Source: Phallusia mammillata
Lineage: Eukaryota
Direction of reading: 5' to 3'
Assembly: GCA_965637545.1 (NCBI GenBank)
Contig: OZ281496.1
Span: 12,028,001 to 12,092,000 of the forward strand
Length of the DNA stretch: 64,000 nt
The notes below the pieces were generated by a model. That model did no database searches. It was given only the letters and a program-made list of their open reading frames with translations, and was not told the DNA's origin. Positions 47,354-60,098 of this stretch are shown one piece after another. Numbering within the stretch: the stretch's first letter is position 1; the number at the start of each line of letters is the position of its first letter. The translations under genes were made by a program, and so were the position numbers.

Positions 47354-49977
47354 CAGGGGTGTGCAACCTTTTTCGTCGGTGGGCCATATAAACAATTTCG
47401 GACATCAAGCGCGGGCCACTCTTTTTTCCTATACCGTATTTACACGTTTTTTACCCCACTATTGGTGCGGCTTGCATTGTAATATTATGTCGATATTATT
47501 TCCCCACGCCTGCGCTTTGTTTTATTTTGCGTTTTAATTTTCTTTCATGTTGGCTTTTACACGTCAACAAACACTCCATCGCGTAGAGCTATTTGTGTGA
47601 CTATAACAGCTGTTGACAAATAGGTGCACTCTGTAGCAAAAAAACGAAGTTTTATTATACAACAGTATCTAACATTGTTGTATAGGGCTTGCAATCGTGT
47701 AAGTACGATACACAATAAATTTGAATATTCTTATGACACACAATTTTAGTGGGACACTTGAAGTTGAGAGTCCTTACACAGCTTGTCAATGCGGGCTTTG
47801 ACAGAAGTGGTAGCTACCCTTAACTGACTAACTAAATTTTCATCAGTCAGCTGACTTCTACATCTTGTTTTGGTGAGCTTCATTTTAGAGAAAAATTGCT
47901 CACAGCAATAGGTGCTACCAAAAAGGGAAGTCATTCGTCTTGCATGTCGGGACAAATTGGGAAACTTTTCACACATGTATAGTTTGTAAAAGTCTACCAA
48001 ACTTTTTTCAGAATATTTTCTCTTTGTGTCCATGTCAGCCTGCAGTTCAACGAGTTCCATTTGGTAATCGTCAGGACTGTCTTCCACTAGGAAATCAAAA
48101 GGTTGAGCAAACAATTTCAGTTTCATTTCATTTTGTCTAAAATCTGGAAATCTGTTTCCAAACTCATCATGCAGCTTCTGTACACTTGCTACATAGTTAG
48201 CGCAATCCAGATCAGGAAATTCTCGTTTCCTGGTTGCAAGACACGTGAAATGGATCAACGTAGCTCTACTCAACTGAAATTGGAAAAGTTTTAATTTATT
48301 CTCAAAAGCACTGATATGCTCAAACAGCTTATTCACAAGCTGACTTTTTCCTTGTAATTTCAAGTTCAGGTCAGAGAGATGCTGTGTTATATCTGTGAGG
48401 AAGGCTAAATCATTCAACCAGTTGTCATCACTCAAAAACGCCACATTCTGATGTTTGCTTTCCATGAAAAACTTAATCTCCTCTCGTAGATTCCAGAACC
48501 TCTTTAGAGTGGCAGCTCTACTAAGCCAACGTATTGCAGAGAAGTACACAACATCAGCATACTCACTGTCCATGTCATGCAGAAAAGCTTTAAATTGCCG
48601 ATGGTTTAAACCTCGTGCTCGAACGTAATTTACACACAGGACAACACTTTTCATGACGTCTACAAAATCAAGAACTTTGGTACACAAGTTCTCTTGGTGA
48701 ATAATGCAGTGGCTCACAACTACGTCCTGTGCTTCAACTGCATTGAGAAATTTTGTGGTGAATCCATTTGTTTTACCTTTCATGGAAGGAGCACCATCTG
48801 TTGTAATACCACACAAGTTAGCAGGATCCAGTTCGAACTTTTTCACTACCTTAAGCACCTGTTCACAGATATCCTGTCCTGTGGTTGTCGAATATAGACT
48901 TCCCATATCTAAAAATTCTTCGACAATATCAAAGTCAGCAGTAACAGCTCTGATGAAAATGACGAGTTGGGCTGTGTCACTAATGTCAGTGCTCTCATCT
49001 AAAGCCAGACTGAAAGCTTCACATGATTTTAGTCTCTCTTTTAAAGTCTCTTTAATATCATTTGAAAGACAATTTGTTCTGCGCGAGACAGTAAAGCGCG
49101 AAAGGCTAGTTTGTTTTACCAACTGGGTTTTCTCTGGACATGCATATTCTGCGAATATTGTCAAACAATGTTTAATAAATTCTCCGTCACTGAAAGGCTT
49201 TCCTTTTTCGGCCATACTTTCACAAATCTTAAAACTGAGTTTTGTCACCAGTTCTGTGTCTTTCTTGTAAGTGGTGAAAACATGTTGTTGTTTTTTCAAA
49301 GAATTTTTCAAATGTTCTATTTTGTCCACTCGTACCTGACCAACCATCCCATCATACTGGGAGGAGTGCTTACTCAAATAATGTCGTTTAATATTATACT
49401 CTTTCATGACAGCAATTGTATTTTGGCAGACGAGACAGACAACACCTTCGTTAAGTGGCTCAACAAGATATTTTGTGCACCATTCGCTGTTGAATAACCT
49501 TCCTTCGCCATCAATTTTTCGTTTCCTAGCTGTTAACATTTCGCAAGCCCTGACACTCCTAAAATACCCTTTCAGTCTGCTGTCGCAGATATATAACTTA
49601 AGAAAACATTCCGCAATAAGCTTGCCAAGTCAACTTTAAAATGTGAGGTGCAAGTAAGTTTCGTCCCAACACTGCCTTTCACAACAAAGTAATTGTTTAC
49701 TACACAAAGAGGAATATTACGTCACATTCGGTTTAGATACGCAACAAGCACCTAATGCGAATAGAAGACTAAAGGTCTGGGTGAATTAAGTTCAATGCGC
49801 TGGTTTAGCTTATTCTTGTTACGTATAGCAACTTAGGAGATTTACCGAAAACTAGCCAGGATTTTTTGCTAAAATGTGCATTTTTACTTGCTCTGAATTT
49901 AGAATGTTGTTGCGGGCCACACTAAATGGCTTGGCGGGCCGGATTGTGGCCCGCGGGCCGCGGGTTGCACACCCCTG
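47354..49977 (-). mobile_element. Intact SPIN/Buster-type hAT transposon
   Basis: Perfect 15-bp TIR CAGGGGTGTGCAACC, perfect TSD GTCTACAA and an uninterrupted transposase ORF. Confidence 0.96.
47746..49539 (-). CDS. hAT transposase, 597 aa, apparently intact
   Basis: BED-type CLVC...RHYLSKH; LALDESTD, TTDGAPSM, HCIIHQENL, AIRWLS, TYCCEQFFS and the C-terminal dimerisation region. Confidence 0.95.
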   Translation of the reverse strand: MLTARKRKIDGEGRLFNSEWCTKYLVEPLNEGVVCLVCQNTIAVMKEYNIKRHYLSKHSSQYDGMVGQVRVDKIEHLKNSLKKQQHVFTTYKKDTELVTKLSFKICESMAEKGKPFSDGEFIKHCLTIFAEYACPEKTQLVKQTSLSRFTVSRRTNCLSNDIKETLKERLKSCEAFSLALDESTDISDTAQLVIFIRAVTADFDIVEEFLDMGSLYSTTTGQDICEQVLKVVKKFELDPANLCGITTDGAPSMKGKTNGFTTKFLNAVEAQDVVVSHCIIHQENLCTKVLDFVDVMKSVVLCVNYVRARGLNHRQFKAFLHDMDSEYADVVYFSAIRWLSRAATLKRFWNLREEIKFFMESKHQNVAFLSDDNWLNDLAFLTDITQHLSDLNLKLQGKSQLVNKLFEHISAFENKLKLFQFQLSRATLIHFTCLATRKREFPDLDCANYVASVQKLHDEFGNRFPDFRQNEMKLKLFAQPFDFLVEDSPDDYQMELVELQADMDTKRKYSEKSLVDFYKLYMCEKFPNLSRHARRMTSLFGSTYCCEQFFSKMKLTKTRCRSQLTDENLVSQLRVATTSVKARIDKLCKDSQLQVSH

Positions 49978-51255
49978 GTCTACAAACTAGCAGAAATGAA
50001 CTTCTTTCAATAACACGCAAGTCAACCCATAATAATAAGAAAGTTTCTGAAAGTGAAACTGCAGAAAGGCACGTGTTGACGCACACCAATGAAAAAGCCC
50101 ATGAATGTCATGTTTGTGAAAAACGATTTTCTAGACGTGGAACTTTGAAAAGGCACATGTTGACACACCTAAGTGAAAAAGCCCACGAATGTCTTGTTTG
50201 TAAGAAAAGATTCACCCTAAGTGATTATTTGAAAACACACCTTGTTACACACACCAATGAGAAACCACATCGATGTGACGTTTGTGAAAAACGATTTTCT
50301 CGAGGGGGAACTTTGAAGACTCACATGCTGACACACACCAAAGAGAAACCTTACAGATGCGATGTTTGTGACAATTTGTTTAGTCTAAGAGGAGGATTGA
50401 AAAGACACATGTTTATTCACACCAAAGAAAAACCCCTTCAATGTCATATTTGTGGGAAAACATTTGCTCTAATTGGAACTATGAAAATACATATGCTGAC
50501 ACACACCAATGAAAAAAAACATATATGTTATGTTTGTGAGAAAAAATTTGCCCGTAGTGGAACTTTGAAAACACACATGCTGACACACATCAATGAAAGA
50601 GCCCACAAATGTCATCTTTGTGAAAAAAGATTCACCCGAGGCGATTATTTGAAAACACACCTGGTTACACACTCCGGTGAGAAACATCATCGATGTGATG
50701 TTTGTGACAAAAGATTTGCCCTCCGTGGTTCTTTGAAAAGACACATGTTAATACATACCGATGAGAAACCTCATCGATGTGATGTGTGTGACAAAAGATT
50801 TAATATAAGAGAAGATTTGAAAAGACACATGTTGAGACACCAAAGAAAAGTCTCATTGATGTTTTGTTTGTGAAAAACGATTAGCCCGAGGTTATTACAT
50901 GAAAATACACATGTTTACACACACTAAAAAAAATTAAAAACGCACAACTTCCCCCCTTTAAACCGAACAAACAGATTTGTTTTGGCAAAAGTATCCCTTA
51001 TGTCGTCACACAAACTTGGATTAAAACACAAACACGCATCTGACTTATCAAAACAATCCGCTATACTGTCACAGACTTGCTTGGGTGATATTATCAACTT
51101 TTTATCCAGCCACTAAAAATGTCTAAACTGTCTGTAGACAAAACGAAGATCAGATTTATCAGAACATTGAGCCACTAAATCGTAAATGCTGGTTTAAGGA
51201 AAAACGCAAACAGCTTGTCTCGATGATCCAGGGATCCAGGGCAAACCAAAATCTC

Positions 51256-51534
51256 GACGTGATTTCGTCGCTACAACTACAAACTTTGTCACAAAAGTTG
51301 CTTCCACATATTATTTCTTAGTTTTTGAAAAAGAAAATTTCCTTAACAAATGTTTTGGTTTGTAGATCTTTAGTTAATAATCACATTCTTGCTTTCACAA
51401 CTATGAAACAGATGTAGATTCATGTCGTTTGCACCAAGATGAGGTTGGTTTCAATGAATCAAACGACTTTGCAATATTATAAGCGTGAAATTTCGCAAAT
51501 AACATTTCAACGTGATGTGTGTAGCGACTACGTC
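51256..51534. repeat. Small element bounded by imperfect inverted repeats
   Basis: GACGTGATTTCGTCGCTACA ... TGTAGCGACTACGTC. Confidence 0.4.
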
Positions 51535-51918
51535 ATAATTTGTGCAAACCTTGCAATAGTGCAAATATTCCCTGTTACAGTTAAATCAGGAGGTTGATCG
51601 ACCTTGCTATCTGGTATTTACCCGCTTTAATCGTATGTTTTGTATTGTGCGGTAAATTTGGCGCTGTTTTGTGTGTGAGAAAATGTGCAAGCGCCAACGG
51701 CAAAGGCATAGTTGTACAGTTAATGTCACGTGCTATGAATTTATAAAACGTACCGCTGATATAATGGCTCATAGCAGTTTTAGTCCTACCGCAGTTAACT
51801 CTTTGGCTTACTGTTTAATTACTTGCATTGAAATAATGTGTTGGTTGCTAGTTAAACTTTAATTTATATGTAAACGTTATTACTATTAATTTCTAACGAC
51901 TTGTTTTGTTTCCCAAAC

Positions 51919-51969
51919 ATTCTATTTGAATAAGCATTCTATTTGAATAAGACATTCTATGTGAATAAG
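51919..51969 (+). other. Three tandem genomic copies of the ascidian spliced-leader exon
   Basis: ATTCTATTTGAATAAG at 51919-51934 and 51936-51951, and ATTCTATGTGAATAAG at 51954-51969, matching the 16-nt Ciona SL. No GT donor or SL-RNA intron follows any copy. Confidence 0.85.
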
Positions 51970-52012
51970 AATAAACAAATTTGAGGTACAAAACCCTTGT
52001 TTGTCGAGACTC

Positions 52013-52681
52013 ATGACATTGATTGACGAGGTACAGTCTGAAAGTGAGGACGAAAGTACAGGTAGTCTTTACCTACCACACTTAATACCGCTTGGCGTGC
52101 CACCGCGCCGTCCGCTGGTTTTCTACAGAAACGTATACAGAGACTGGTGGGCTAGATTCTTTGATTCAGTAGACTATTTCGAACTCCCTCCTAGAGAAGA
52201 GTTCGTCGAAGGTGTTTTGCCTAGAGACATTGCCGTGCAAATAAGTTCATTCAATACCAACAGAAGTTACATCACTACAACGTATAGCTTCAATCAACTA
52301 ATCATCAGAGATCCAGACGAGGCTGATCTTTATCACGATCTATACGCTATACGCAAGTTTACCAACATAAACACGGTGTTGCTAAGCAGGTTACGAAGGC
52401 CATTTACTACACCTTTCTACCCACAAACTTTGGTGCTGCCCAAAGTTTGGACACAAGATCTCACCATTCGCTCTGAAACTGTTGATTTACTTCTCGTCTA
52501 TCACGCAAGTGAAATCCCAGCTGAGAGAGGAGGAGGTGTACACATTTTTACCATCCAGACAATAATCTTTGAACCCGACGACACTGTGGAACCTGAGGAG
52601 ATTGCAGCAACCGAAGAAACTGCAGAAACTGAGGAGACTACTAGGATTGAAGAAATCTATAGATCTGTCTATAGTTCATGA
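52013..52681 (+). CDS. Orphan 222-aa protein with acidic termini
   Basis: Single-exon open frame from the first ATG, 43 nt after the SL array. No domain recognised. Confidence 0.7.
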   Translation: MTLIDEVQSESEDESTGSLYLPHLIPLGVPPRRPLVFYRNVYRDWWARFFDSVDYFELPPREEFVEGVLPRDIAVQISSFNTNRSYITTTYSFNQLIIRDPDEADLYHDLYAIRKFTNINTVLLSRLRRPFTTPFYPQTLVLPKVWTQDLTIRSETVDLLLVYHASEIPAERGGGVHIFTIQTIIFEPDDTVEPEEIAATEETAETEETTRIEEIYRSVYSS

Positions 52682-52953
52682 TTTCAGCTGCCCCACGAAA
52701 GGTGAGCAGAATTTGAACTTATATTCTTGGCTGTTATTTTATTACGGCTTGCATGTATTTTGTTGAATGTGTATGATCATTTACGGCCAAACTGTCTAAA
52801 ACAATTCGCCAAGCAACTTGTGGGAATCCTCCCAGTTTACACGAAGTAATTAAATCGGCTGTTAGTCAAAGTACGCGCAGTAAAACGAAACCTAAAGATA
52901 AAGAAAAGCCCAAACAACGTACTGTCGCGTTACAGACCCCGCCTGAGACAACC

Positions 52954-53266
52954 ATGACTACCCCAAATAACGGCGAATCCTCTAAACAAACGTCGCAAAG
53001 CGATAATGCCGTTGCAAATCGAAGTGAAAATGACAAATTACGCATCTCATTAATGAAAATTCCGCCCATTTGGCCTAACCAACATGACATAAAGGAATAT
53101 TTCGCGTTTTTGGACAAATTTTATGAATCTAATCAAATCGGAGATGAAGCAACTAAATTTCAATTGTTTGTTTCTAACTTAACCCCAACGCAATCAGCCA
53201 ATTACAGAAATGCTTTAACTGAAGCAACCGCTTCATTAACAGAACCCTACAGTACGCTTAAACAAG
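52954..53266 (+). pseudogene. gag: Ty3/Gypsy gag N-terminal domain, truncated by the Maverick insertion
   Basis: LMKIPPIWPNQHDIKEYFAFLDKFYESNQIGDEATKFQLFVSNL...EPYSTLKQE matches the KLPPFW...WF...TKF...PY..LK pattern of Gypsy gag. Confidence 0.8.
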
Positions 53267-53715
53267 AGTAGTATTGGTTCGTCCCGGGGCTCCCTCCACC
53301 TATTTTGGTCCCGCCACCCCCGAGTGGCACCCGCTACCTATTTTGGTCCCGCCACCTATTTTATCATTGTTCTGTGAGATCGCGACCGGTCGAGAGAGAG
53401 AGAGAGAGATGAGGGCTAGAGCCGGCGGCGGTTTTTGTCTGGCTTATTTCAGGTATTTGTTCGGGGTCTGTTCGGCGCTGTCTACCTTGCATTTTCGGCT
53501 ATGCTGAGAAGGTTATTTTGTTAAGAAGGTAACTGTCATTTTGCGAAATAAAATAAGCAACTATTAATGAAATTTTGTTTCCAACAACGGCTGCGTGGAA
53601 ATGCTATTCACAACTTAAAAGTCGAGTGAAGAGAGGGCTAGAGCCGGCGGCGGTTTTTGTCTGACTTATTTCAGGTATTCGTTCGGGGTCTGTTCGGCGC
53701 TGTCTGGCTTGCATT

Positions 53716-54935: not shown

Positions 54936-57900
54936 ATGAATCCCATGCGTAGTTATCAATGCGGCAAATGTCCGGCTCTCTTCTGGACAGAAGCTAATAT
55001 GCGTGCTCATGAAGCTTCTTGTTCGTCGATTATCAAGTGTTCCTATTGCGATAAGCGGTGAGTGGTATTTTTTTAAGAGTTCTTGCATTGTATTTTTAAA
55101 ACTAATACGTCTTTTTCATCTGTTGCAGACTCTCGACAAAGGCGACCCTGCGTCGTCATGTAAAAACAGCGTGTCGCAAAAACCCCAACAAGTCAGCAGA
55201 CGCTCGATGTCCCCGTTGTGGAATTGTGTAAGTTTTCCTTCGCCTTTAGTTTGAAGTTTACCCTTGAATTTGAAATTATCGCCTGTTATTCCAGGACCAA
55301 GGTGCGAAGCTACACACGGCACCTTGCCAAATGCTCTGGGGAGTGGGGTGAGGCTCGTGGCGTTCCGTTGTTTGAGGACGGTGCTTCCGCAAGGTAGTTA
55401 GGTAATCGCCAAAAAGCGACGGAAATTCAAACATTGCTTTTTATATGCAGTACAAGCAGGCAGTCGGAAAAAATGGAGACGGCACGATCGGCGGGTGTAG
55501 AATCGGAGATCGACACTACATCGGACCAAAGGTAGTTGCCCTGTTCTAATCGCCTTTGGTGATTTTATTTTTGCAATTGTAGTTGTTTTTCAGCGACATC
55601 GAAATTCCGCCAAACATGGTCGCGGCGTCATACGACAGCTGTAGCCCTGGTGAGGGTGACAAGGTACCCGATGACGACCTCGAACTTGCTCATTGGTAAG
55701 TCAACAACGGGTAACCGTTTTCTGAGCAATTGTGCTTATTCGGTTCCTATATTGCAGTGCGAGCGACTATGCCGACAATGAAATAGCGGAAGGTTGGTTC
55801 GAAGAAGAAGAGCCTCCTCTCATCAACACTCGGCCAACCTCGCCCAGTCCCAGTGAGCAGAGTTTCCTGATTCAAGAAGCTGTTAATAACACTTCTGGCA
55901 CGTGGGACGATATTTAAGTTTTTGACACCCATAATAACTGCTTAAAGTAAAATAAAAATTACCGACGTTTTTATGTTACAGAGCGCCAGCGGAAGACGGT
56001 GAAAATCCATCGAGCCAAGGGTATGCTTTCAGAATTTTTAGCAGTCGACATAGAGTCGAGGCACACCTTACTGAAAATATTTCTTTTCTTTTTTCTAGGC
56101 AGGAAACCTTTTCCCAGCTCGTTCAAAGTGATGTAGCTAGCGAATCGGATATTCTTAGGTGGGAAAGAAACAAGGCAGTCTTGTGCGCCGCCTGCGGTTT
56201 TTGGTAAGTAACATAACAGCCGACGTGTCGGATTACTTTGTGACTTTGATAATATTGTCCGACTGTTACAGGCGTTTACCGTTGTCGGCTCACGTGTGCA
56301 ATGTCATCCCATCAGACATGAATATTCAGCCTACTGCAAATTCCAGACCGTAAGTGTCTTTTTGCAGTAACCGTTTTGTGTTTTTTAAATATAAATTGTT
56401 ACTCGTTTTTTTTCGTCACACCGCGGTTACCATTGCCTTTTCGGGCATTATAAAAAAACACTGGACGCTTCTTTTCCTAGGTTAGAACGCGTGTCCGAAA
56501 ATGGACATGAAGAACACCTAAACGAGTCTGATGTTCGTGCATTGGAAAACGCAGAACCGATCCTGTGCGATATCTGCGGTTGTTGGTCATATTTCCTGGC
56601 GACTTTGATGCTATTAACCGACTTGTTTAGGAGTTTACCATCGGAGGGTCACGTCTGCGATGCAACCCCCCAACGACAATTCCGATATTCGCACTGTGGA
56701 AAACGCAAAACCAGGCTTGTGTTGTATCTGCGGCCGTTGGTAAGTACCCTGAAAGCAAAAAGTGTCCTATTTCTTGACGACTTTGATGCTATTAAACCAA
56801 TGTTTTAGGAGTTCGGAGGGGCACGTCTGCGACGCTACTCCAAGCCTCGATCCTCAACCTTCTGCCGATTCTAGACGGTAAGTTTGCATTGACCTTTTTG
56901 TGTGATTTTCTTTTTTTTTTATAGTAAAACGGTTTTTACACCTCAGATCTCGACCAATTCAGCAGGGCGGCGCCGTAGACCGGTCTGAAAAGATGCGGGA
57001 ACCGCGTCCACTGCCTGGCAGTCGCCAACACGTTATAGTCACGGAAACAGCTCTGCGCCCCGCTAGTGGCATCATCGCGGAGCGTTGGGACGCGATACGA
57101 TCGCACCGGGATCTAGGTCCAATTAGTGGTGCGTTCAACTATCGATTGCCGTTGGACTGGCGCACCAGCACTGTCGCGCAGGACATCATGGCTGTGCGCT
57201 AACGGGCCTTCTGCATCAACGCAGGTTTCGGGTTTGGTCACGGGCGAAACGCGATACTTCCACACGTCAGACAACAATTTCCATTTGTTCGACGACACGG
57301 TGTTAATTCGCTCCCTCGACGAGCTCCAGGCCTTTTCTCGAGCAGGTTGCTGAGCGAGATTGCTTGGAGTGGCTTAGGCTTCAGCGCGAGGATTCGTCGT
57401 GGGTCGTGGAAGCGATCACGAATGTTACCTTTTTTTGTTATTATGTGGACGGGCCGTTTATCGGGCAAGCTGAGCAGCTTCCGATCCACTTGTTGCGGAA
57501 TCGTGGCTTGGCGCTTCATAGGAACTGTCCGAGGGCGGCTGATTAAAGACAACCTGTGCTTTTTCCGCTGCCTGGCCTTGTTTCGTGACTCTAGTCCAGA
57601 AACGGTGGAGGCGAATGCGGCAGGCTTCTGTCAGCAATATTGCTTGGCGGTCGATGGCGGTTTTAACCCCGACACTTTTCCCGGTGTGAAACTGGTGGAT
57701 CTGCCAGTCATTGAGGAGCTGTTCAAGCTCAACATCAATGTTTTTCATTTGGCGGCCGACGCTCCTCGGAACGGTTGCGTTTTAAAGTCGCGGAGTGTGC
57801 GTCGCCGCGCATTCAAGGAACCTCGCATCCTCAATTTACACCTTTTCAAGGAGCATTTCAGTTATATAGAAAATTTGGACATACTTGCATCAGGATGTGT

Positions 57901-60098
57901 GTGCAAGGTCTGCAGGAAACACTTTGGAAAGTTGTCCAAGTGCAGTGAGCACGAAAACACCTGCAAAGGTCTGGTGAAAAACGTCTATGTTGGCGGGGTG
58001 TATTCCACGTCTAAGTCAGTGTTGGATGCGCTTGACGAGGCCGGTATAGAAGTGCCCACATCCCTTCGTTTTTTCCCTTTCCGGGCTGCATTCGACCTCG
58101 AGGCGTACTTCAAAACGGAGAATCTCCCTGCAAATGCGTCAAAGACCACCTGGCACGCCGAGCATCTTCCCTTGAGCGTTTCCATTTGTTCTAACGTTCC
58201 TGGCTTCCAGGAGGCCAATTGCTTCGTCACGGATGGGGACGCTGCGAAACTCGTCGATCGCATGCTTTCCTATCTCGTGCGAGTTCAGGAGGCTTCACGC
58301 GAAGCAATGATGGAACGCTTTCAGGGCGTTTTTGACGATTTGGACAGGCTACTGGCTGAATCGTGTAAACGCGAGCCGTGCCAGGAAGTTGACAACCACC
58401 CTCTGGCAAAACTCCGCTCGCGTCTTGTCACGCACCTTACGATTTTGCCAGTCATCAGCTTCAACGGTGGGAAATATGATATCAATTTGATGAAGCGATG
58501 GTTCCTGCTCCAGCTCACCCGAACCGTCACCATCACCTTTGTGGTGAAACGGAACAATAACTTTATGTGCATCCAGACACATAGGTTTAAATTCCTGGAT
58601 ATGAGGAACTATCTTGCCCCAAACCATTCATATGCGTCTTTTCTTCGCGCTTTCGGATGTGACGCCGAGAAGGGATGGCTTCCATACAAATACATGACGG
58701 ATCTGTCCCGACTCCACGAAACAGCTTTACCGCCTATTGACGCGTTTTACACTTCGTTGACAAAGAAGGCTTTGGCGCTTGAAGAATACCAACGCTGCGT
58801 GGAGGTATGGAGCCAGGAGGGAATGTCGTCATTGCGCGACTTTCTCCGATGGTACAACAACCTAGACGTTGTCCCATTTCTTCAAGCGATCCAAAAACAC
58901 TTTGAATTCTTCGAGAGCCGCGGTGTGGATGCTTTATGGATGGTCTGTCCCTACCGGGTCTCACTTTAAATTTTTTGATGAAAACTGTCAGTCACGATGT
59001 CAATCTTACCCTGTTCGGCCCGAGACATCAACACCTTCACCGGTTGATGCGTGAGGCCGTTGTTGGTGGTCCCTCCATAGTTTTTTCAAGATACCAGCAC
59101 GCTGGAAAAACCTGCATTCGTCCGATGAAATATGGCAACAGTGCCAAGGTCTGCGGTTCTGTGGTCGGCTTTGACTGCAACTCGATGTACCTGGACTGTT
59201 TAGGATCGCTGCAATGCACATCATATTTTACAGTTCTGGTTAGCAAACCCGATTCTGTCGACCGTGAAGTCGTGTGAAGTACGGTTGACTGGCGGGCGAA
59301 TGGCTGGACTAACTAACAATGCAAAACACCGGAAGATCAAGTATCTCGACGAGCAACAGGCCCAAGCTGCAGTGGCATTACCGGAGTTTGAGAGACAGAC
59401 CGAAGTTGGCGACGGCATTTTCGAGGTACAACTCCGGAAAAGTCGCTTAGTCCATGACTTGCCCATTCAGTGTGGGCTTCTCGTCTACCAAATGGCTAAG
59501 TTGAGGCTTCTGGAGTTTTACTACGATTGCCTCGATCGTTATGTCGACCGAAGGGACTTTCAATTGGCTCAATGTGACACTGACAGTTTGTACTATGGGA
59601 TATATCAGGCAAACAGATGAGTGACGTCGGCCAAACCTTCGTCGCGAGTTTTTTTAGGCATACCACACGTGGTTTCCAGCGGAGGCTTGCGACGCCCATC
59701 GCAGCGACTTTGTCGAGCGGTCGATCGCTGGAAAGACATTCCATGCAGCGGCATGCTGTAAAGCCAACAAAAAGCACCACCTTAGGACTCCGGGATTGTT
59801 TAAACTGGAATGGGCCGGTCAGGCAATTGTAGCCTTAACGTCAAAGACCTATTACTGCCACGGGTCGACGGATAAACAGGCGGGCAAGGGCCTGAACAAC
59901 GCGCAGAACCCCTTTGACCTACAGCGCTATCTGGATGTTTTGAATTCGGCGACCAGCTCCAGTGGAACAAACGTTGGATTCAGATGCCTGAACCAAAGCG
60001 TTTTTACGTACGAGCAGACCCGTCAGGGTTTGACGTACTTTTAACCAAAACGCAAAGTTCTGGCGGACGGCTTTTCGACTGCTCCACTGGACATCTAA
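54936..60098 (+). pseudogene. polB: Protein-primed family B DNA polymerase with a 12-intron zinc-finger N-terminal extension
   Basis: Exons 54936-55057, 55129-55227, 55295-55393, 55451-55531, 55594-55695, 55758-55901, 55982-56020, 56099-56203, 56272-56349, 56481-56585, 56631-56739, 56809-56877 and 56947-60098. The last exon has AAFDLEAYF, FNGGKYD, KFLDMRNY, KGWLPY, YNNLDV, VGGPSIVF, GFDCNSMY, CDTDS and SKTYYC, with stops and frameshifts. Confidence 0.9.

What the first reader, a model, noticed from the sequence alone, without database searches (positions are those of the whole stretch)
51919..51969. Triple spliced-leader relic: possible record of repeated trans-splicing and retroposition cycles in a chordate
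Seen: three head-to-tail copies of the 16-nt Ciona-type SL separated by only C and AC. The two 5' copies are perfect, the copy nearest the ORF has one mismatch, none is followed by a GT donor (so these are not SL RNA genes), and the first ATG of a long intact ORF follows 43 nt later. Established: in ascidians this leader is normally added post-transcriptionally and is absent from the gene; tandem relict SLs that decay toward the ATG are the known signature of mRNA recycling in dinoflagellates. Inference: a Gypsy-associated RNA was SL-trans-spliced, reverse transcribed, reintegrated and trans-spliced again up to three times; alternatively the retroelement has captured SL mimics to gain translation or to serve as splice acceptors, since each copy ends in AG. 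I know of no description of this in tunicates. The null explanation is local tandem duplication of one captured SL.
Basis: partly seen in the sequence, partly recalled or inferred. Interest (0 to 1): 0.9.

Follow-up and report, generated by a model that had tools for sequence, protein, structure and literature searches.

The report
Host spliced leader inside retrotransposon LTR
The three spliced-leader copies are real, but they are a length-variable short tandem repeat built from one captured host leader at the likely transcription start inside the long terminal repeat of a gypsy-type retrotransposon. They are not a count of three trans-splicing and retroposition cycles.

Summary
Observation confirmed. 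Window 51919-51969 holds two perfect copies and one 1-mismatch copy of ATTCTATTTGAATAAG. This is the species' own SL: about 3,180 genomic copies carry a GT donor, and a cDNA contig starts with it.

The block lies 400 nt inside a 906-bp LTR (51520-52425) of a Ty3/gypsy element. A TATA-like box sits about 30 nt upstream, AATAAA follows directly, and a conserved LTR-borne ORF (dN/dS about 0.2) starts 43 nt downstream.

Among about 50 related LTR copies the array has 1 to 6 units, mostly perfect at the 5' side and decayed at the 3' side.

Repeated trans-splicing is nevertheless not supported:
- There is no AG acceptor within 68 nt upstream.
- The spacers (C, AC) repeat the last U3 bases.
- Partial units and a two-unit block duplication occur.
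- Identical arrays sit at independent insertions with different target-site duplications.
- A first-unit variant is inherited at about five loci.

Best reading: one SL was captured from a trans-spliced RNA, became the start of the LTR's R region, and was then expanded and contracted by slippage or template misalignment.

An unrelated gypsy family has the same layout, so the SL-in-LTR design looks general and, as far as I could find, undescribed. The scan had already noted SL-tagged repeats elsewhere in this genome (s1-375378, s1-375379).

The parts
51520..52425 (+). 5' LTR (906 bp) of a Ty3/gypsy-type retrotransposon. It starts TGTAG and ends CCCACA. Relative to other copies, this copy lacks about 44 bp near 51561.
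   Evidence: The repeat boundaries are shared by more than 40 genomic copies. Solo copies have 4-bp target-site duplications. Relatives carry RVT_1 and RT_RNaseH_2 internally.
51520..51918 (+). Inferred U3, about 400 nt. It diverges fast: 75% identity between subfamilies against 90% for the ORF part.
   Evidence: It is shared at about 95% identity with a second LTR type (L031-type) that has a different downstream part.
51884..51890 (+). TATA-like TATTAAT, 29-35 nt upstream of the first SL base.
   Evidence: Read. An unrelated gypsy family has TAAATAAT 22-29 nt upstream of its SL. Promoter function is inferred, not shown.
51901..51914 (+). Pyrimidine tract TTGTTTTGTTTCCC followed by AAAC. No AG lies between 51851 and the array.
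   Evidence: It is conserved as TTTCYYAAAC before the first SL in 46 genomic copies.
51919..51934 (+). SL unit 1, perfect.
51936..51951 (+). SL unit 2, perfect, preceded by spacer C (51935).
   Evidence: This unit is absent from sister copies such as L002.
51954..51969 (+). SL unit 3 (T8G variant, here called V1), preceded by spacer AC (51952-51953). It is a positional homologue shared by most younger copies.
51970..51975 (+). AATAAA directly after the array: candidate poly(A) signal. In the older subfamily it is the tail of a degenerate SL-like unit (ATGTTGATTGAATAAA).
   Evidence: Its use as a poly(A) signal is inferred.
51919..51990 (+). Inferred R region: the SL array plus about 20 nt.
   Evidence: Identity with L031-type LTRs stays high from the LTR start to about 28 nt past AATAAA and then falls to noise. 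A cDNA contig of an analogous family begins at SL base 1 next to the template-switch-oligo tail. The limits are not mapped by RNA ends for this family.
52013..52681 (+). ORF of 222 codons with no known homologue. The first 137 codons lie inside the LTR, and it reads through the primer-binding site.
   Evidence: It is open to the LTR end in nearly all 30 copies examined. dN/dS is 0.16-0.24 between subfamilies at dS of about 0.3. No Pfam family, no homologue and no Atlas lead were found.
52431..52443 (+). Primer-binding-site-like TGGTGCTGCCCAA, 5 nt after the LTR end.
   Evidence: The cognate tRNA was not identified.
52426..53267 (+). Start of the internal region, with a gag-like ORF (52954-53271, DUF7041). 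This copy is cut off at 53267.
   Evidence: Relatives L002 and L037 continue into the RT and RNase H region, while nothing downstream in the window matches them.

Best explanation
The triple SL is one allele of a short tandem array derived from the host spliced leader. The array forms the start of the R region, at the U3/R boundary and therefore the likely transcription start, of the LTR of a Ty3/gypsy retrotransposon family.

Proposed sequence of events:
1. One SL exon entered the family long ago, through reverse transcription of a trans-spliced element RNA.
2. Since then the SL has been copied as ordinary LTR DNA.
3. The array has grown, mostly next to its first unit, and shrunk by slippage or misaligned template switching over this A/T-rich repeat. 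The repeats AATAAG, AATAAA and AAAC supply microhomology. The slippage could happen during reverse transcription (first-strand transfer over a repetitive R) or during DNA replication.

The resulting element RNA would begin with an SL-like leader, followed by a 43-nt untranslated stretch and a conserved ORF that starts inside the LTR. It would therefore resemble a host trans-spliced mRNA.

Shown here: the LTR anatomy, the copy-number ladder, inheritance of arrays through transposition, the slippage marks and ORF conservation. Inferred: the transcription start at the SL, use of AATAAA as the poly(A) signal, the single capture event, and any benefit of the leader.
For: LTR identity:
- Boundaries are shared by many copies.
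- The LTR has TG..CA ends, and seven solo copies have different 4-bp target-site duplications.
- A PBS-like site follows the 5' LTR, and the purine-rich stretch ggcgtggggtat precedes six 3' LTRs.
- A full-length relative has RT and RNase H.

Position at the U3/R boundary:
- A TATA-like box lies about 30 nt upstream and AATAAA lies directly downstream.
- A second LTR type shares U3, the array and about 28 nt more, then diverges, as expected from recombination at R.
- An unrelated gypsy family (L112/L113; RT and RNase H; tRNA-Pro-like PBS) has the same layout: TATA-like box, SL, then AATAAA. A cDNA contig of that family starts at SL base 1 next to the template-switch-oligo tail.

Slippage rather than serial splicing:
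- No AG lies within 68 nt upstream.
- Spacers C and AC equal the last U3 bases.
- There are partial units AATAAG and TTGAATAAG, 4-nt duplications in the old relic, and a two-unit block duplication in L101.
- Another family has TGG+SL four times and TTAATTGG+SL twice.
- Identical arrays occur at independent insertions: L006 and L007; L008, L009, L012 and L016.
- The first-unit variant CTTCT... is shared by copies on four chromosomes.

ORF reality.
Against: - No RNA 5' or 3' ends were obtained for this family. The only runs available were assembled contigs, so the transcription start and the limits of R are inferred.
- Growth is polar. New perfect units lie next to the first unit, and older units (V1, then the ATGTTGATTG relic) lie 3' of them, with 0, 1, 1 and 4-5 mismatches. 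Undirected slippage predicts this less well than addition at the 5' end.
- Every unit, full or partial, keeps its 3' AAG, and junctions vary only at the 5' side of the next unit (-2, -1, 0, +C, +AC). The -2 junction recurs in three families. This hints at a process tied to RNA 5' ends.
- A cDNA contig shows SL followed by a 2-nt-shortened SL for the third family, a form that has no DNA copy in the reference assembly.
Confidence: 0.6

Rival explanations
1. Serial recycling. The element RNA is SL trans-spliced, reverse transcribed and reintegrated, and each round lays a fresh SL upstream of the previous one. The number of units would then record the number of rounds.
For: - A ladder of 1 to 6 units exists, with perfect units at the 5' side and progressively decayed units at the 3' side.
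- All units keep the exact SL 3' end, as splicing would give.
- 5'-shortened internal units (TTCTATTTG.., TCTATTTG..) match the commonest truncated SL forms seen in Ciona full-length cDNAs (Table 1 of PMC1488885).
- A cDNA contig carries the template-switch-oligo tail, an SL, a shortened SL and then LTR sequence of the third family. The reference genome holds only single-SL DNA copies of that sequence.
Against: - No AG acceptor lies within 68 nt upstream of the first unit. The junctions would need AA, AC, CA or AT as acceptor dinucleotides.
- The array is embedded in the LTR behind 400 bp of conserved U3.
- Spacers copy the U3 end.
- The same array is found at independent insertions, so cycles occur without any gain.
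- The first-unit variant CTTCT is inherited at about five loci, so the first unit is not renewed each cycle.
- Partial units, block duplications and flank-including duplications cannot come from splicing.
- The double-SL cDNA may simply come from a copy that is polymorphic in that animal.
Confidence: 0.13
2. SL as a trans-splice landing pad that doubles as R. Element precursors start upstream, in U3 or in flanking genes. They are trans-spliced at the AG that ends a genomic SL unit, using the pyrimidine tract just upstream. The mature RNA therefore starts with a true capped SL that matches the SL in the 3' LTR, and this allows first-strand transfer. Array length would still change by slippage. 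This is a functional variant of the best explanation, not a rival for the origin of the three copies.
For: - A 14-nt pyrimidine tract ends 4 nt before the first SL, and each unit ends in AG.
- Two unrelated gypsy families have the same SL-then-AATAAA layout.
- A cDNA 5' end falls exactly at SL base 1.
- Gypsy RNAs can be SL trans-spliced in C. elegans: a Cer1 subgenomic RNA carries SL1 (PMC3315495).
Against: - The inherited CTTCT first-unit variant argues that the 5'-most base is DNA-templated in that lineage.
- A TATA-like box at the right distance suggests ordinary initiation at the SL.
- No RNA evidence was obtained for outron-containing precursors.
Confidence: 0.15
3. DNA-level capture of a fragment of an SL RNA gene, or chance or convergent resemblance of an initiator region to the SL.
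For: SL RNA genes are very abundant, at about 3,180 copies, and the main array lies on the same chromosome about 0.9 Mb away.
Against: - Homology to the SL RNA gene covers exactly the 16-nt exon. Neither the gene's upstream sequence nor its GTAAGC intron is present.
- Perfect 16-mers recur in several families.
- Chance expectation in the window is 0.07 matches even with 2 mismatches allowed.
Confidence: 0.04

Closest known systems
Relict DinoSL copies at the 5' end of dinoflagellate retrogenes (mRNA recycling). Library papers: PMC6050394, PMC12014239. The original description is recalled from memory.
   Same: Both are genome-encoded copies of a leader that is normally added post-transcriptionally. 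Both can be tandem and more decayed toward the coding region, and both imply passage through a trans-spliced RNA and reverse transcription.
   Different: - Here the copies are inside an LTR, behind 400 bp of conserved U3, not at the edge of a retrocopy.
- The units are full length rather than cut at an internal AG.
- No acceptor AG lies upstream.
- Spacers copy the upstream flank.
- Unit number changes without relation to transposition cycles.
R-region and U3 tandem repeats of retroviruses and LTR retrotransposons, which change in length by template misalignment during strand transfer (general retrovirology, from memory).
   Same: A short repeat at the U3/R boundary varies in copy number between otherwise near-identical copies, and is inherited through transposition.
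   Different: Here the repeat unit is the host's spliced leader, exact to the base. To my knowledge that has not been described for an R region.
Cer1, a Ty3/gypsy element of C. elegans (PMC3315495).
   Same: It is a gypsy-type element in an SL trans-splicing host whose RNA can receive the host SL.
   Different: In Cer1 the SL is added to a spliced subgenomic RNA and is not encoded in the element. The genomic RNA is not trans-spliced.
Retrotransposons that target SL RNA genes: SLACS, CZAR and CRE in trypanosomatids and NeSL-1 in nematodes (from memory).
   Same: Both involve a physical association between a retroelement and SL sequence.
   Different: Those are non-LTR elements inserted into functional SL RNA genes. 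Here an exon-only SL sits inside dispersed LTRs and no SL RNA gene is involved.
Ty1 of yeast, whose gag ORF begins inside the 5' LTR (from memory).
   Same: An element ORF starts in the LTR downstream of the transcription start and reads across the primer-binding site.
   Different: It is a different superfamily, and the ORF here is an orphan upstream of a separate gag-like ORF.

Membership tests
LTR of a Ty3/gypsy retrotransposon | A discrete repeat with TG..CA ends, flanked by short target-site duplications when solo. | tested here: met
   The ends are TGTAG...CCCACA. Seven solo copies have seven different 4-bp duplications: AATG, CACA, GACA, GACG, CAGT, AATA and ACTC.
LTR of a Ty3/gypsy retrotransposon | A primer-binding site after the 5' LTR and a purine-rich tract before the 3' LTR. 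| tested here: inconclusive
   TGGTGCTGCCC lies 5 nt after the LTR, but no tRNA was matched. ggcgtggggtat precedes six 3' LTRs.
LTR of a Ty3/gypsy retrotransposon | An internal region with gag and with pol in the order RT then RNase H (gypsy type). | tested here: met
   The full-length relative L037 has a DUF7041 gag-like ORF, RVT_1 and RT_RNaseH_2. Integrase was not looked for. The window copy keeps only the first 842 bp.
SL RNA gene | The SL exon is followed by a GT donor and an intron with a stem and an Sm-like site. | tested here: not met
   The units are followed by CA, AC and AA. True genes read SL, then GTAAGC, a stem and a T-run.
Serially recycled retrocopy with relict leaders (dinoflagellate type) | The leaders sit at the 5' boundary of the retroposed unit, and the upstream sequence is unrelated between copies. 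| tested here: not met
   400 bp upstream of the array is conserved in all copies.
Serially recycled retrocopy with relict leaders (dinoflagellate type) | Each junction lies where a canonical AG acceptor preceded the older leader. | tested here: not met
   There is no AG within 68 nt upstream. The implied acceptor dinucleotides would be AA, AC, CA or AT.
Serially recycled retrocopy with relict leaders (dinoflagellate type) | A ladder of copy numbers with older units toward the ORF. | tested here: met
   There are 1 to 6 units, with 0, 1, 1 and 4-5 mismatches from 5' to 3'. Exceptions are L032, L034 and L101.
Serially recycled retrocopy with relict leaders (dinoflagellate type) | One unit is gained per retroposition cycle. 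| tested here: not met
   Identical arrays occur at independent insertions with different target-site duplications.
Short tandem repeat evolving by slippage or misalignment | Partial units, duplicated blocks, duplicated units that include flanking bases, and microhomology at the junctions. | tested here: met
   AATAAG and TTGAATAAG inserts, the L101 block duplication, spacers C and AC equal to the U3 end, TGG+SL four times in L038, and AAAC on both sides of the array.
R region of an LTR (transcript start to poly(A) site) | RNA 5' ends at its first base and poly(A) addition at its last. | not testable with these tools
   Only assembled contigs were available. Indirect support comes from the TATA-like box, AATAAA, the U3+R sharing that ends about 28 nt past AATAAA, and a cDNA start at SL base 1 in an analogous family.

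The most novel reading that the evidence does not exclude
Gypsy-type retrotransposons of this ascidian use the host spliced leader as the terminal repeat (R) of their genomic RNA. The RNA 5' end would be a true SL, trans-spliced onto the AG of the genomic SL copy behind a pyrimidine tract. The matching SL in the 3' LTR would then guide first-strand transfer. This would make replication partly independent of an own promoter and disguise the RNA as a host mRNA. Occasional splicing or template jumps just upstream would add units. This would be a new way for an LTR element to define its ends, found independently in at least two families.
Probability: 0.15. Interest if true: 0.85.

Novelty: new variant of a known kind. 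Interest (0 to 1): 0.6.

Why it matters
Genome-encoded spliced leaders are a natural tag of reverse-transcribed, trans-spliced RNA. They have been exploited mainly in dinoflagellates.

Here a chordate genome carries about 680 such copies outside SL RNA genes. At least two unrelated gypsy families have fixed the leader at the likely start of their transcripts, in front of a conserved ORF.

If the leader is functional, as a translation or stability signal, an acceptor, or a strand-transfer repeat, it shows a retroelement adopting a host mRNA identity mark. It would also give a direct handle on how trans-splicing and retrotransposition interact in tunicates.

If it is only a relic, it is still a useful marker for dating and tracing retroposition. 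It is also a caution that SL-primed RNA methods will pick up retroelement transcripts that were never trans-spliced.

Tried and rejected
- **RNA evidence.** The single runs search and the single read-laying run gave only assembled contigs. There is no information on starts, ends or strand for this family. Contigs spanning the whole LTR may be read-through RNA or DNA.
- **ORF identity.** The 222-codon ORF has no Pfam family, no homologue in the 5.8-billion protein set within the tool's length limits, and no Atlas neighbour above the noise level (best 0.85). I did not fold it.
- **Terminal inverted repeat idea.** I tested whether the many non-gene SLs are the ends of a DNA transposon. No inverted partner lies within 400 bp, so I rejected this. 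They belong to a short repeat of about 100 bp that starts at the SL and carries a hammerhead-like core.
- **Rfam.** The search on SL gene and repeat loci gave only sub-threshold microRNA-like hits on a palindromic locus.
- **L042.** Its 5.94-kb-spaced SL pair is a long tandem duplication, not an LTR pair.
- **L031-type.** This proved to be a 668-bp LTR piece embedded in a 75-bp satellite, not a clean element.
- **5' versus 3' LTR arrays.** Comparing them within single full-length elements would separate changes at transposition from later slippage.
- **Literature.** Searches found no description of an SL inside an LTR or of SL relics in tunicates. The library is incomplete, so this is not proof of novelty.
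- **Not attempted.** I did not build a consensus or a repaired element, and I did not single out any copy as intact.

Full report
**1. The observation**

The sequence is as described.
- ATTCTATTTGAATAAG occurs at 51919-51934 and at 51936-51951.
- ATTCTATGTGAATAAG occurs at 51954-51969.
- The spacers are C and AC. None of the three units is followed by GT.
- The next ATG, at 52013, lies 43 nt downstream and opens a 222-codon frame.
- Shuffles of the window give 0.07 matches at up to 2 mismatches, against 3 observed.

**2. Is this the species' spliced leader? Yes.**
- The assembly has 240 Mb, and the window is C3:12,028,001-12,092,000. It holds 3,860 exact copies of the 16-mer.
- 3,179 of these are followed by GT. 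Most lie in a 553-bp tandem array at C3:11.108 to at least 11.147 Mb. Its unit reads SL, GTAAGC, a short stem and a T-run, which is the form of an SL RNA gene.
- In run X9, a 55-nt cDNA contig carries the tail of a template-switch oligo (GAGTACGGG) joined directly to the first base of the 16-mer.
- The 16-mer is identical to the main Ciona SL in Table 1 of PMC1488885.
- About 681 copies are not followed by GT.

**3. What the block sits in**

Genome searches with the flanks show that 51520-52425 is a discrete 906-bp repeat.
- Its ends are TGTAG...CCCACA.
- Seven solo copies are flanked by seven different 4-bp duplications.
- Six copies are preceded by the same purine-rich stretch.
- In the window, TGGTGCTGCCC follows 5 nt after the end.
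- Downstream, 52426-53267 matches the start of the internal region of a full-length relative (L037 plus L005, about 8.6 kb). That relative encodes a DUF7041 gag-like ORF, RVT_1 and RT_RNaseH_2.

The repeat is therefore the LTR of a Ty3/gypsy element. The window holds a 5' LTR plus 842 bp and is cut off at 53267. The SL block starts 400 nt into the LTR.

**4. Position within the LTR**
- TATTAAT lies 29-35 nt upstream of the first SL base.
- A 14-nt pyrimidine tract ends 4 nt upstream of it.
- AATAAA follows the last unit directly.
- A second LTR type (L031-L036, L040 and others) is about 95% identical from the LTR start, through the array, to about 28 nt beyond AATAAA. It is unalignable after that. 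This pattern is expected when two elements recombine at R during first-strand transfer.

I therefore place U3 at 51520-51918, R at 51919 to about 51990, and U5 from there to 52425. This is an inference. No RNA ends were available for this family.

**5. An independent family with the same design**

A 5-kb element on C7 (L112/L113) has 554-bp LTRs that are unrelated to the window's LTR except for the SL.
- It has RT and RNase H and a tRNA-Pro-like primer-binding site.
- Its SL lies at nt 423 of the 564-nt LTR stretch examined. TAAATAAT is 22-29 nt upstream and AATAAA is 2 nt downstream.
- Its relatives (L104-L111) carry one SL, one SL plus a partial unit, or two SLs.
- The X9 cDNA contig mentioned in section 2 belongs to this family. 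It reads oligo tail, SL, TCTATTTGAATAAG and then the family's post-SL sequence. So an RNA of this family begins at SL base 1.
- That double form has no DNA copy in the reference: there are only two hits, both with a single SL. It may come from a copy that is polymorphic in that animal, or from a fresh SL laid on a relic. I could not tell which.

**6. The ORF**

The frame from 52013 is real.
- It stays open to the LTR end in nearly all 30 copies examined.
- Between the two subfamilies the ORF part is 90% identical, against 75% for U3.
- dN/dS is 0.16-0.24 at dS of about 0.3.
- It runs through the primer-binding site and ends about 270 nt before the gag-like ORF.
- It has no recognisable relatives.

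**7. The ladder**

About 50 arrays were read.
- **Older subfamily (17 copies).** One SL, then C, then ATGTTGATTGAATAAA. This last stretch is a degenerate SL-like unit (11 of 16 bases) whose tail is the AATAAA.
- **Two intermediate copies (L089, L090).** SL, a 1-mismatch unit, AC, V1 (the T8G unit), C, the same old relic now ending in AAG, AC, then AATAAA.
- **Younger window-type copies (18).** Two to four units. L002 has SL-AC-V1. The window has SL-C-SL-AC-V1. L006 and L007 have SL-AATAAGC-SL-C-SL-AC-V1.
- **L031-type copies (17).** Two to six units.

Perfect units are mostly at the 5' side, and the oldest units are at the 3' side.

**8. Why I do not read it as serial trans-splicing**
- (a) No AG lies within 68 nt upstream of the first unit. 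The junctions would need AA, AC, CA or AT as acceptors.
- (b) The spacers C and AC are the last one or two bases of U3 (AAAC), so the duplicated segment reaches beyond the SL.
- (c) Partial units occur (AATAAG, TTGAATAAG), as do 4-nt duplications in the old relic and a two-unit block duplication in L101. AAAC flanks the array on both sides, and AATAAG/AATAAA give internal microhomology.
- (d) A different, 5'-truncated, non-LTR-like repeat family has TGG+SL four times (L038) and TTAATTGG+SL twice (L077), while its other copies have one SL.
- (e) Identical arrays occur at independent insertions with different target-site duplications: L006 and L007; L008, L009, L012 and L016. Transposition therefore proceeds without gaining a unit.
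- (f) The first-unit variant CTTCTATTTGAATAAG is shared by copies on C1, C5, C6 and C7. The first unit is therefore copied from DNA and not renewed by splicing in that lineage.
- (g) Perfect units also occur 3' of mutated ones (L032, L034, L101).

**9. What remains unexplained**
- Growth is biased to the 5' side.
- Every unit keeps its 3' AAG, while the 5' edge of the next unit varies (-2, -1, 0, +1, +2).
- The -2 junction recurs in three families.

Microhomology at AATAAG explains part of this. Constraint on the first unit, as initiator or leader, may explain the bias. A process tied to RNA 5' ends is not excluded, for example template jumps at the end of minus-strand strong-stop synthesis, or rare splicing.

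**10. Best explanation**
- One SL exon, with exact exon boundaries and no SL gene flanks, entered the family through a trans-spliced RNA. This happened before the two subfamilies split (dS about 0.3).
- It became the start of R.
- Its copy number has since drifted by slippage or template misalignment.

The three copies in the window are one allele of this array. They are not a count of cycles. I give this reading 0.6. I give the serial model 0.13 and a functional landing-pad version 0.15. The landing-pad version is compatible with slippage as the source of the copies.

**11. Comparison with what is known**
- Relict leaders in dinoflagellate retrogenes share the principle but not the anatomy (PMC6050394, PMC12014239).
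- Cer1 shows that a gypsy RNA can receive an SL, but Cer1 does not encode one (PMC3315495).
- SLACS and NeSL-type elements insert into SL genes, which is a different relation.
- I found no report of an SL inside an LTR or of SL relics in tunicates. The paper library is incomplete.

**12. Earlier scan notes**

Earlier notes of this scan on the same genome fit a genome-wide theme of SL-tagged repeats.
- An SL fused to a hammerhead ribozyme (s1-375378). I saw this family myself.
- A LINE whose 5' end is the SL (s1-375379). I did not check it.
- The orphan ORF after this array (s1-408768). I tested it.

**13. Limits**
- The organism's name is coded. That it is an ascidian is inferred from the SL.

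Noticed in passing
G000:C3:11,108,338 to at least 11,147,465 (locus L083); about 0.9 Mb before the window on the same contig: A large tandem array of SL RNA genes with a 553-bp unit. Each unit reads SL, GTAAGC, a short stem and a T-run. It accounts for most of the 3,179 SL+GT copies.
   Followed up: partly
Loci L044, L045, L057, L059, L064, L065, L067, L074, L079, L081, L082 (C1, various places): A short repeat of about 100 bp starts exactly at SL base 1 and continues with a hammerhead-like core (CTGATGA, a short stem, GAAA). It has dozens of copies at 75-85% identity. Some copies form head-to-head palindromes (L045, L074). It matches the earlier scan note s1-375378.
   Followed up: partly
L038 (C7:2,940,052-2,940,124); relatives L058, L076, L077: A repeat family with a common 3' end and variable 5' truncation, which is the pattern of non-LTR retroposons. 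It carries an internal SL. L038 has TGG+SL four times, L077 has TTAATTGG+SL twice, and the other copies have one SL.
   Followed up: partly
L112/L113 (C7:13,571,617 and 13,576,666); relatives L104-L111 including L039/L111 (C6:7,550,401): A second, unrelated gypsy family has the SL inside both LTRs, between a TATA-like box and AATAAA, and a tRNA-Pro-like primer-binding site. Its copies have 1, 1.4 or 2 SLs. A cDNA contig with the template-switch-oligo tail starts at its SL and shows a double-SL form that is absent from the reference DNA.
   Followed up: partly
L031 (C3:9,717,000-9,726,999): 668-bp pieces of LTR (U3, array and about 170 bp) are embedded in long arrays of a satellite with a period of about 75 bp. 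The pieces recur every 2,373 bp.
   Followed up: no
L042 (C1:2,665,000-2,674,999): A tandem duplication of about 5.94 kb, with no ORF of 150 or more codons, carries an SL followed by a degenerate hammerhead-like stretch. The same spacing recurs nearby at C1:2,684,816 and 2,690,753.
   Followed up: no
window 47746-49539 (-), 49926-50873 (+), 57347-59620 (+): The neighbours of the LTR are other mobile or repeat-type genes. One ORF has hAT dimerisation and DUF4371 domains. One ORF has eight or nine C2H2 zinc fingers.
   Followed up: no
window 51560-51564: The window's LTR lacks about 44-47 bp that all other copies have at this point in U3. RNA and DNA contigs show the longer form.
   Followed up: no
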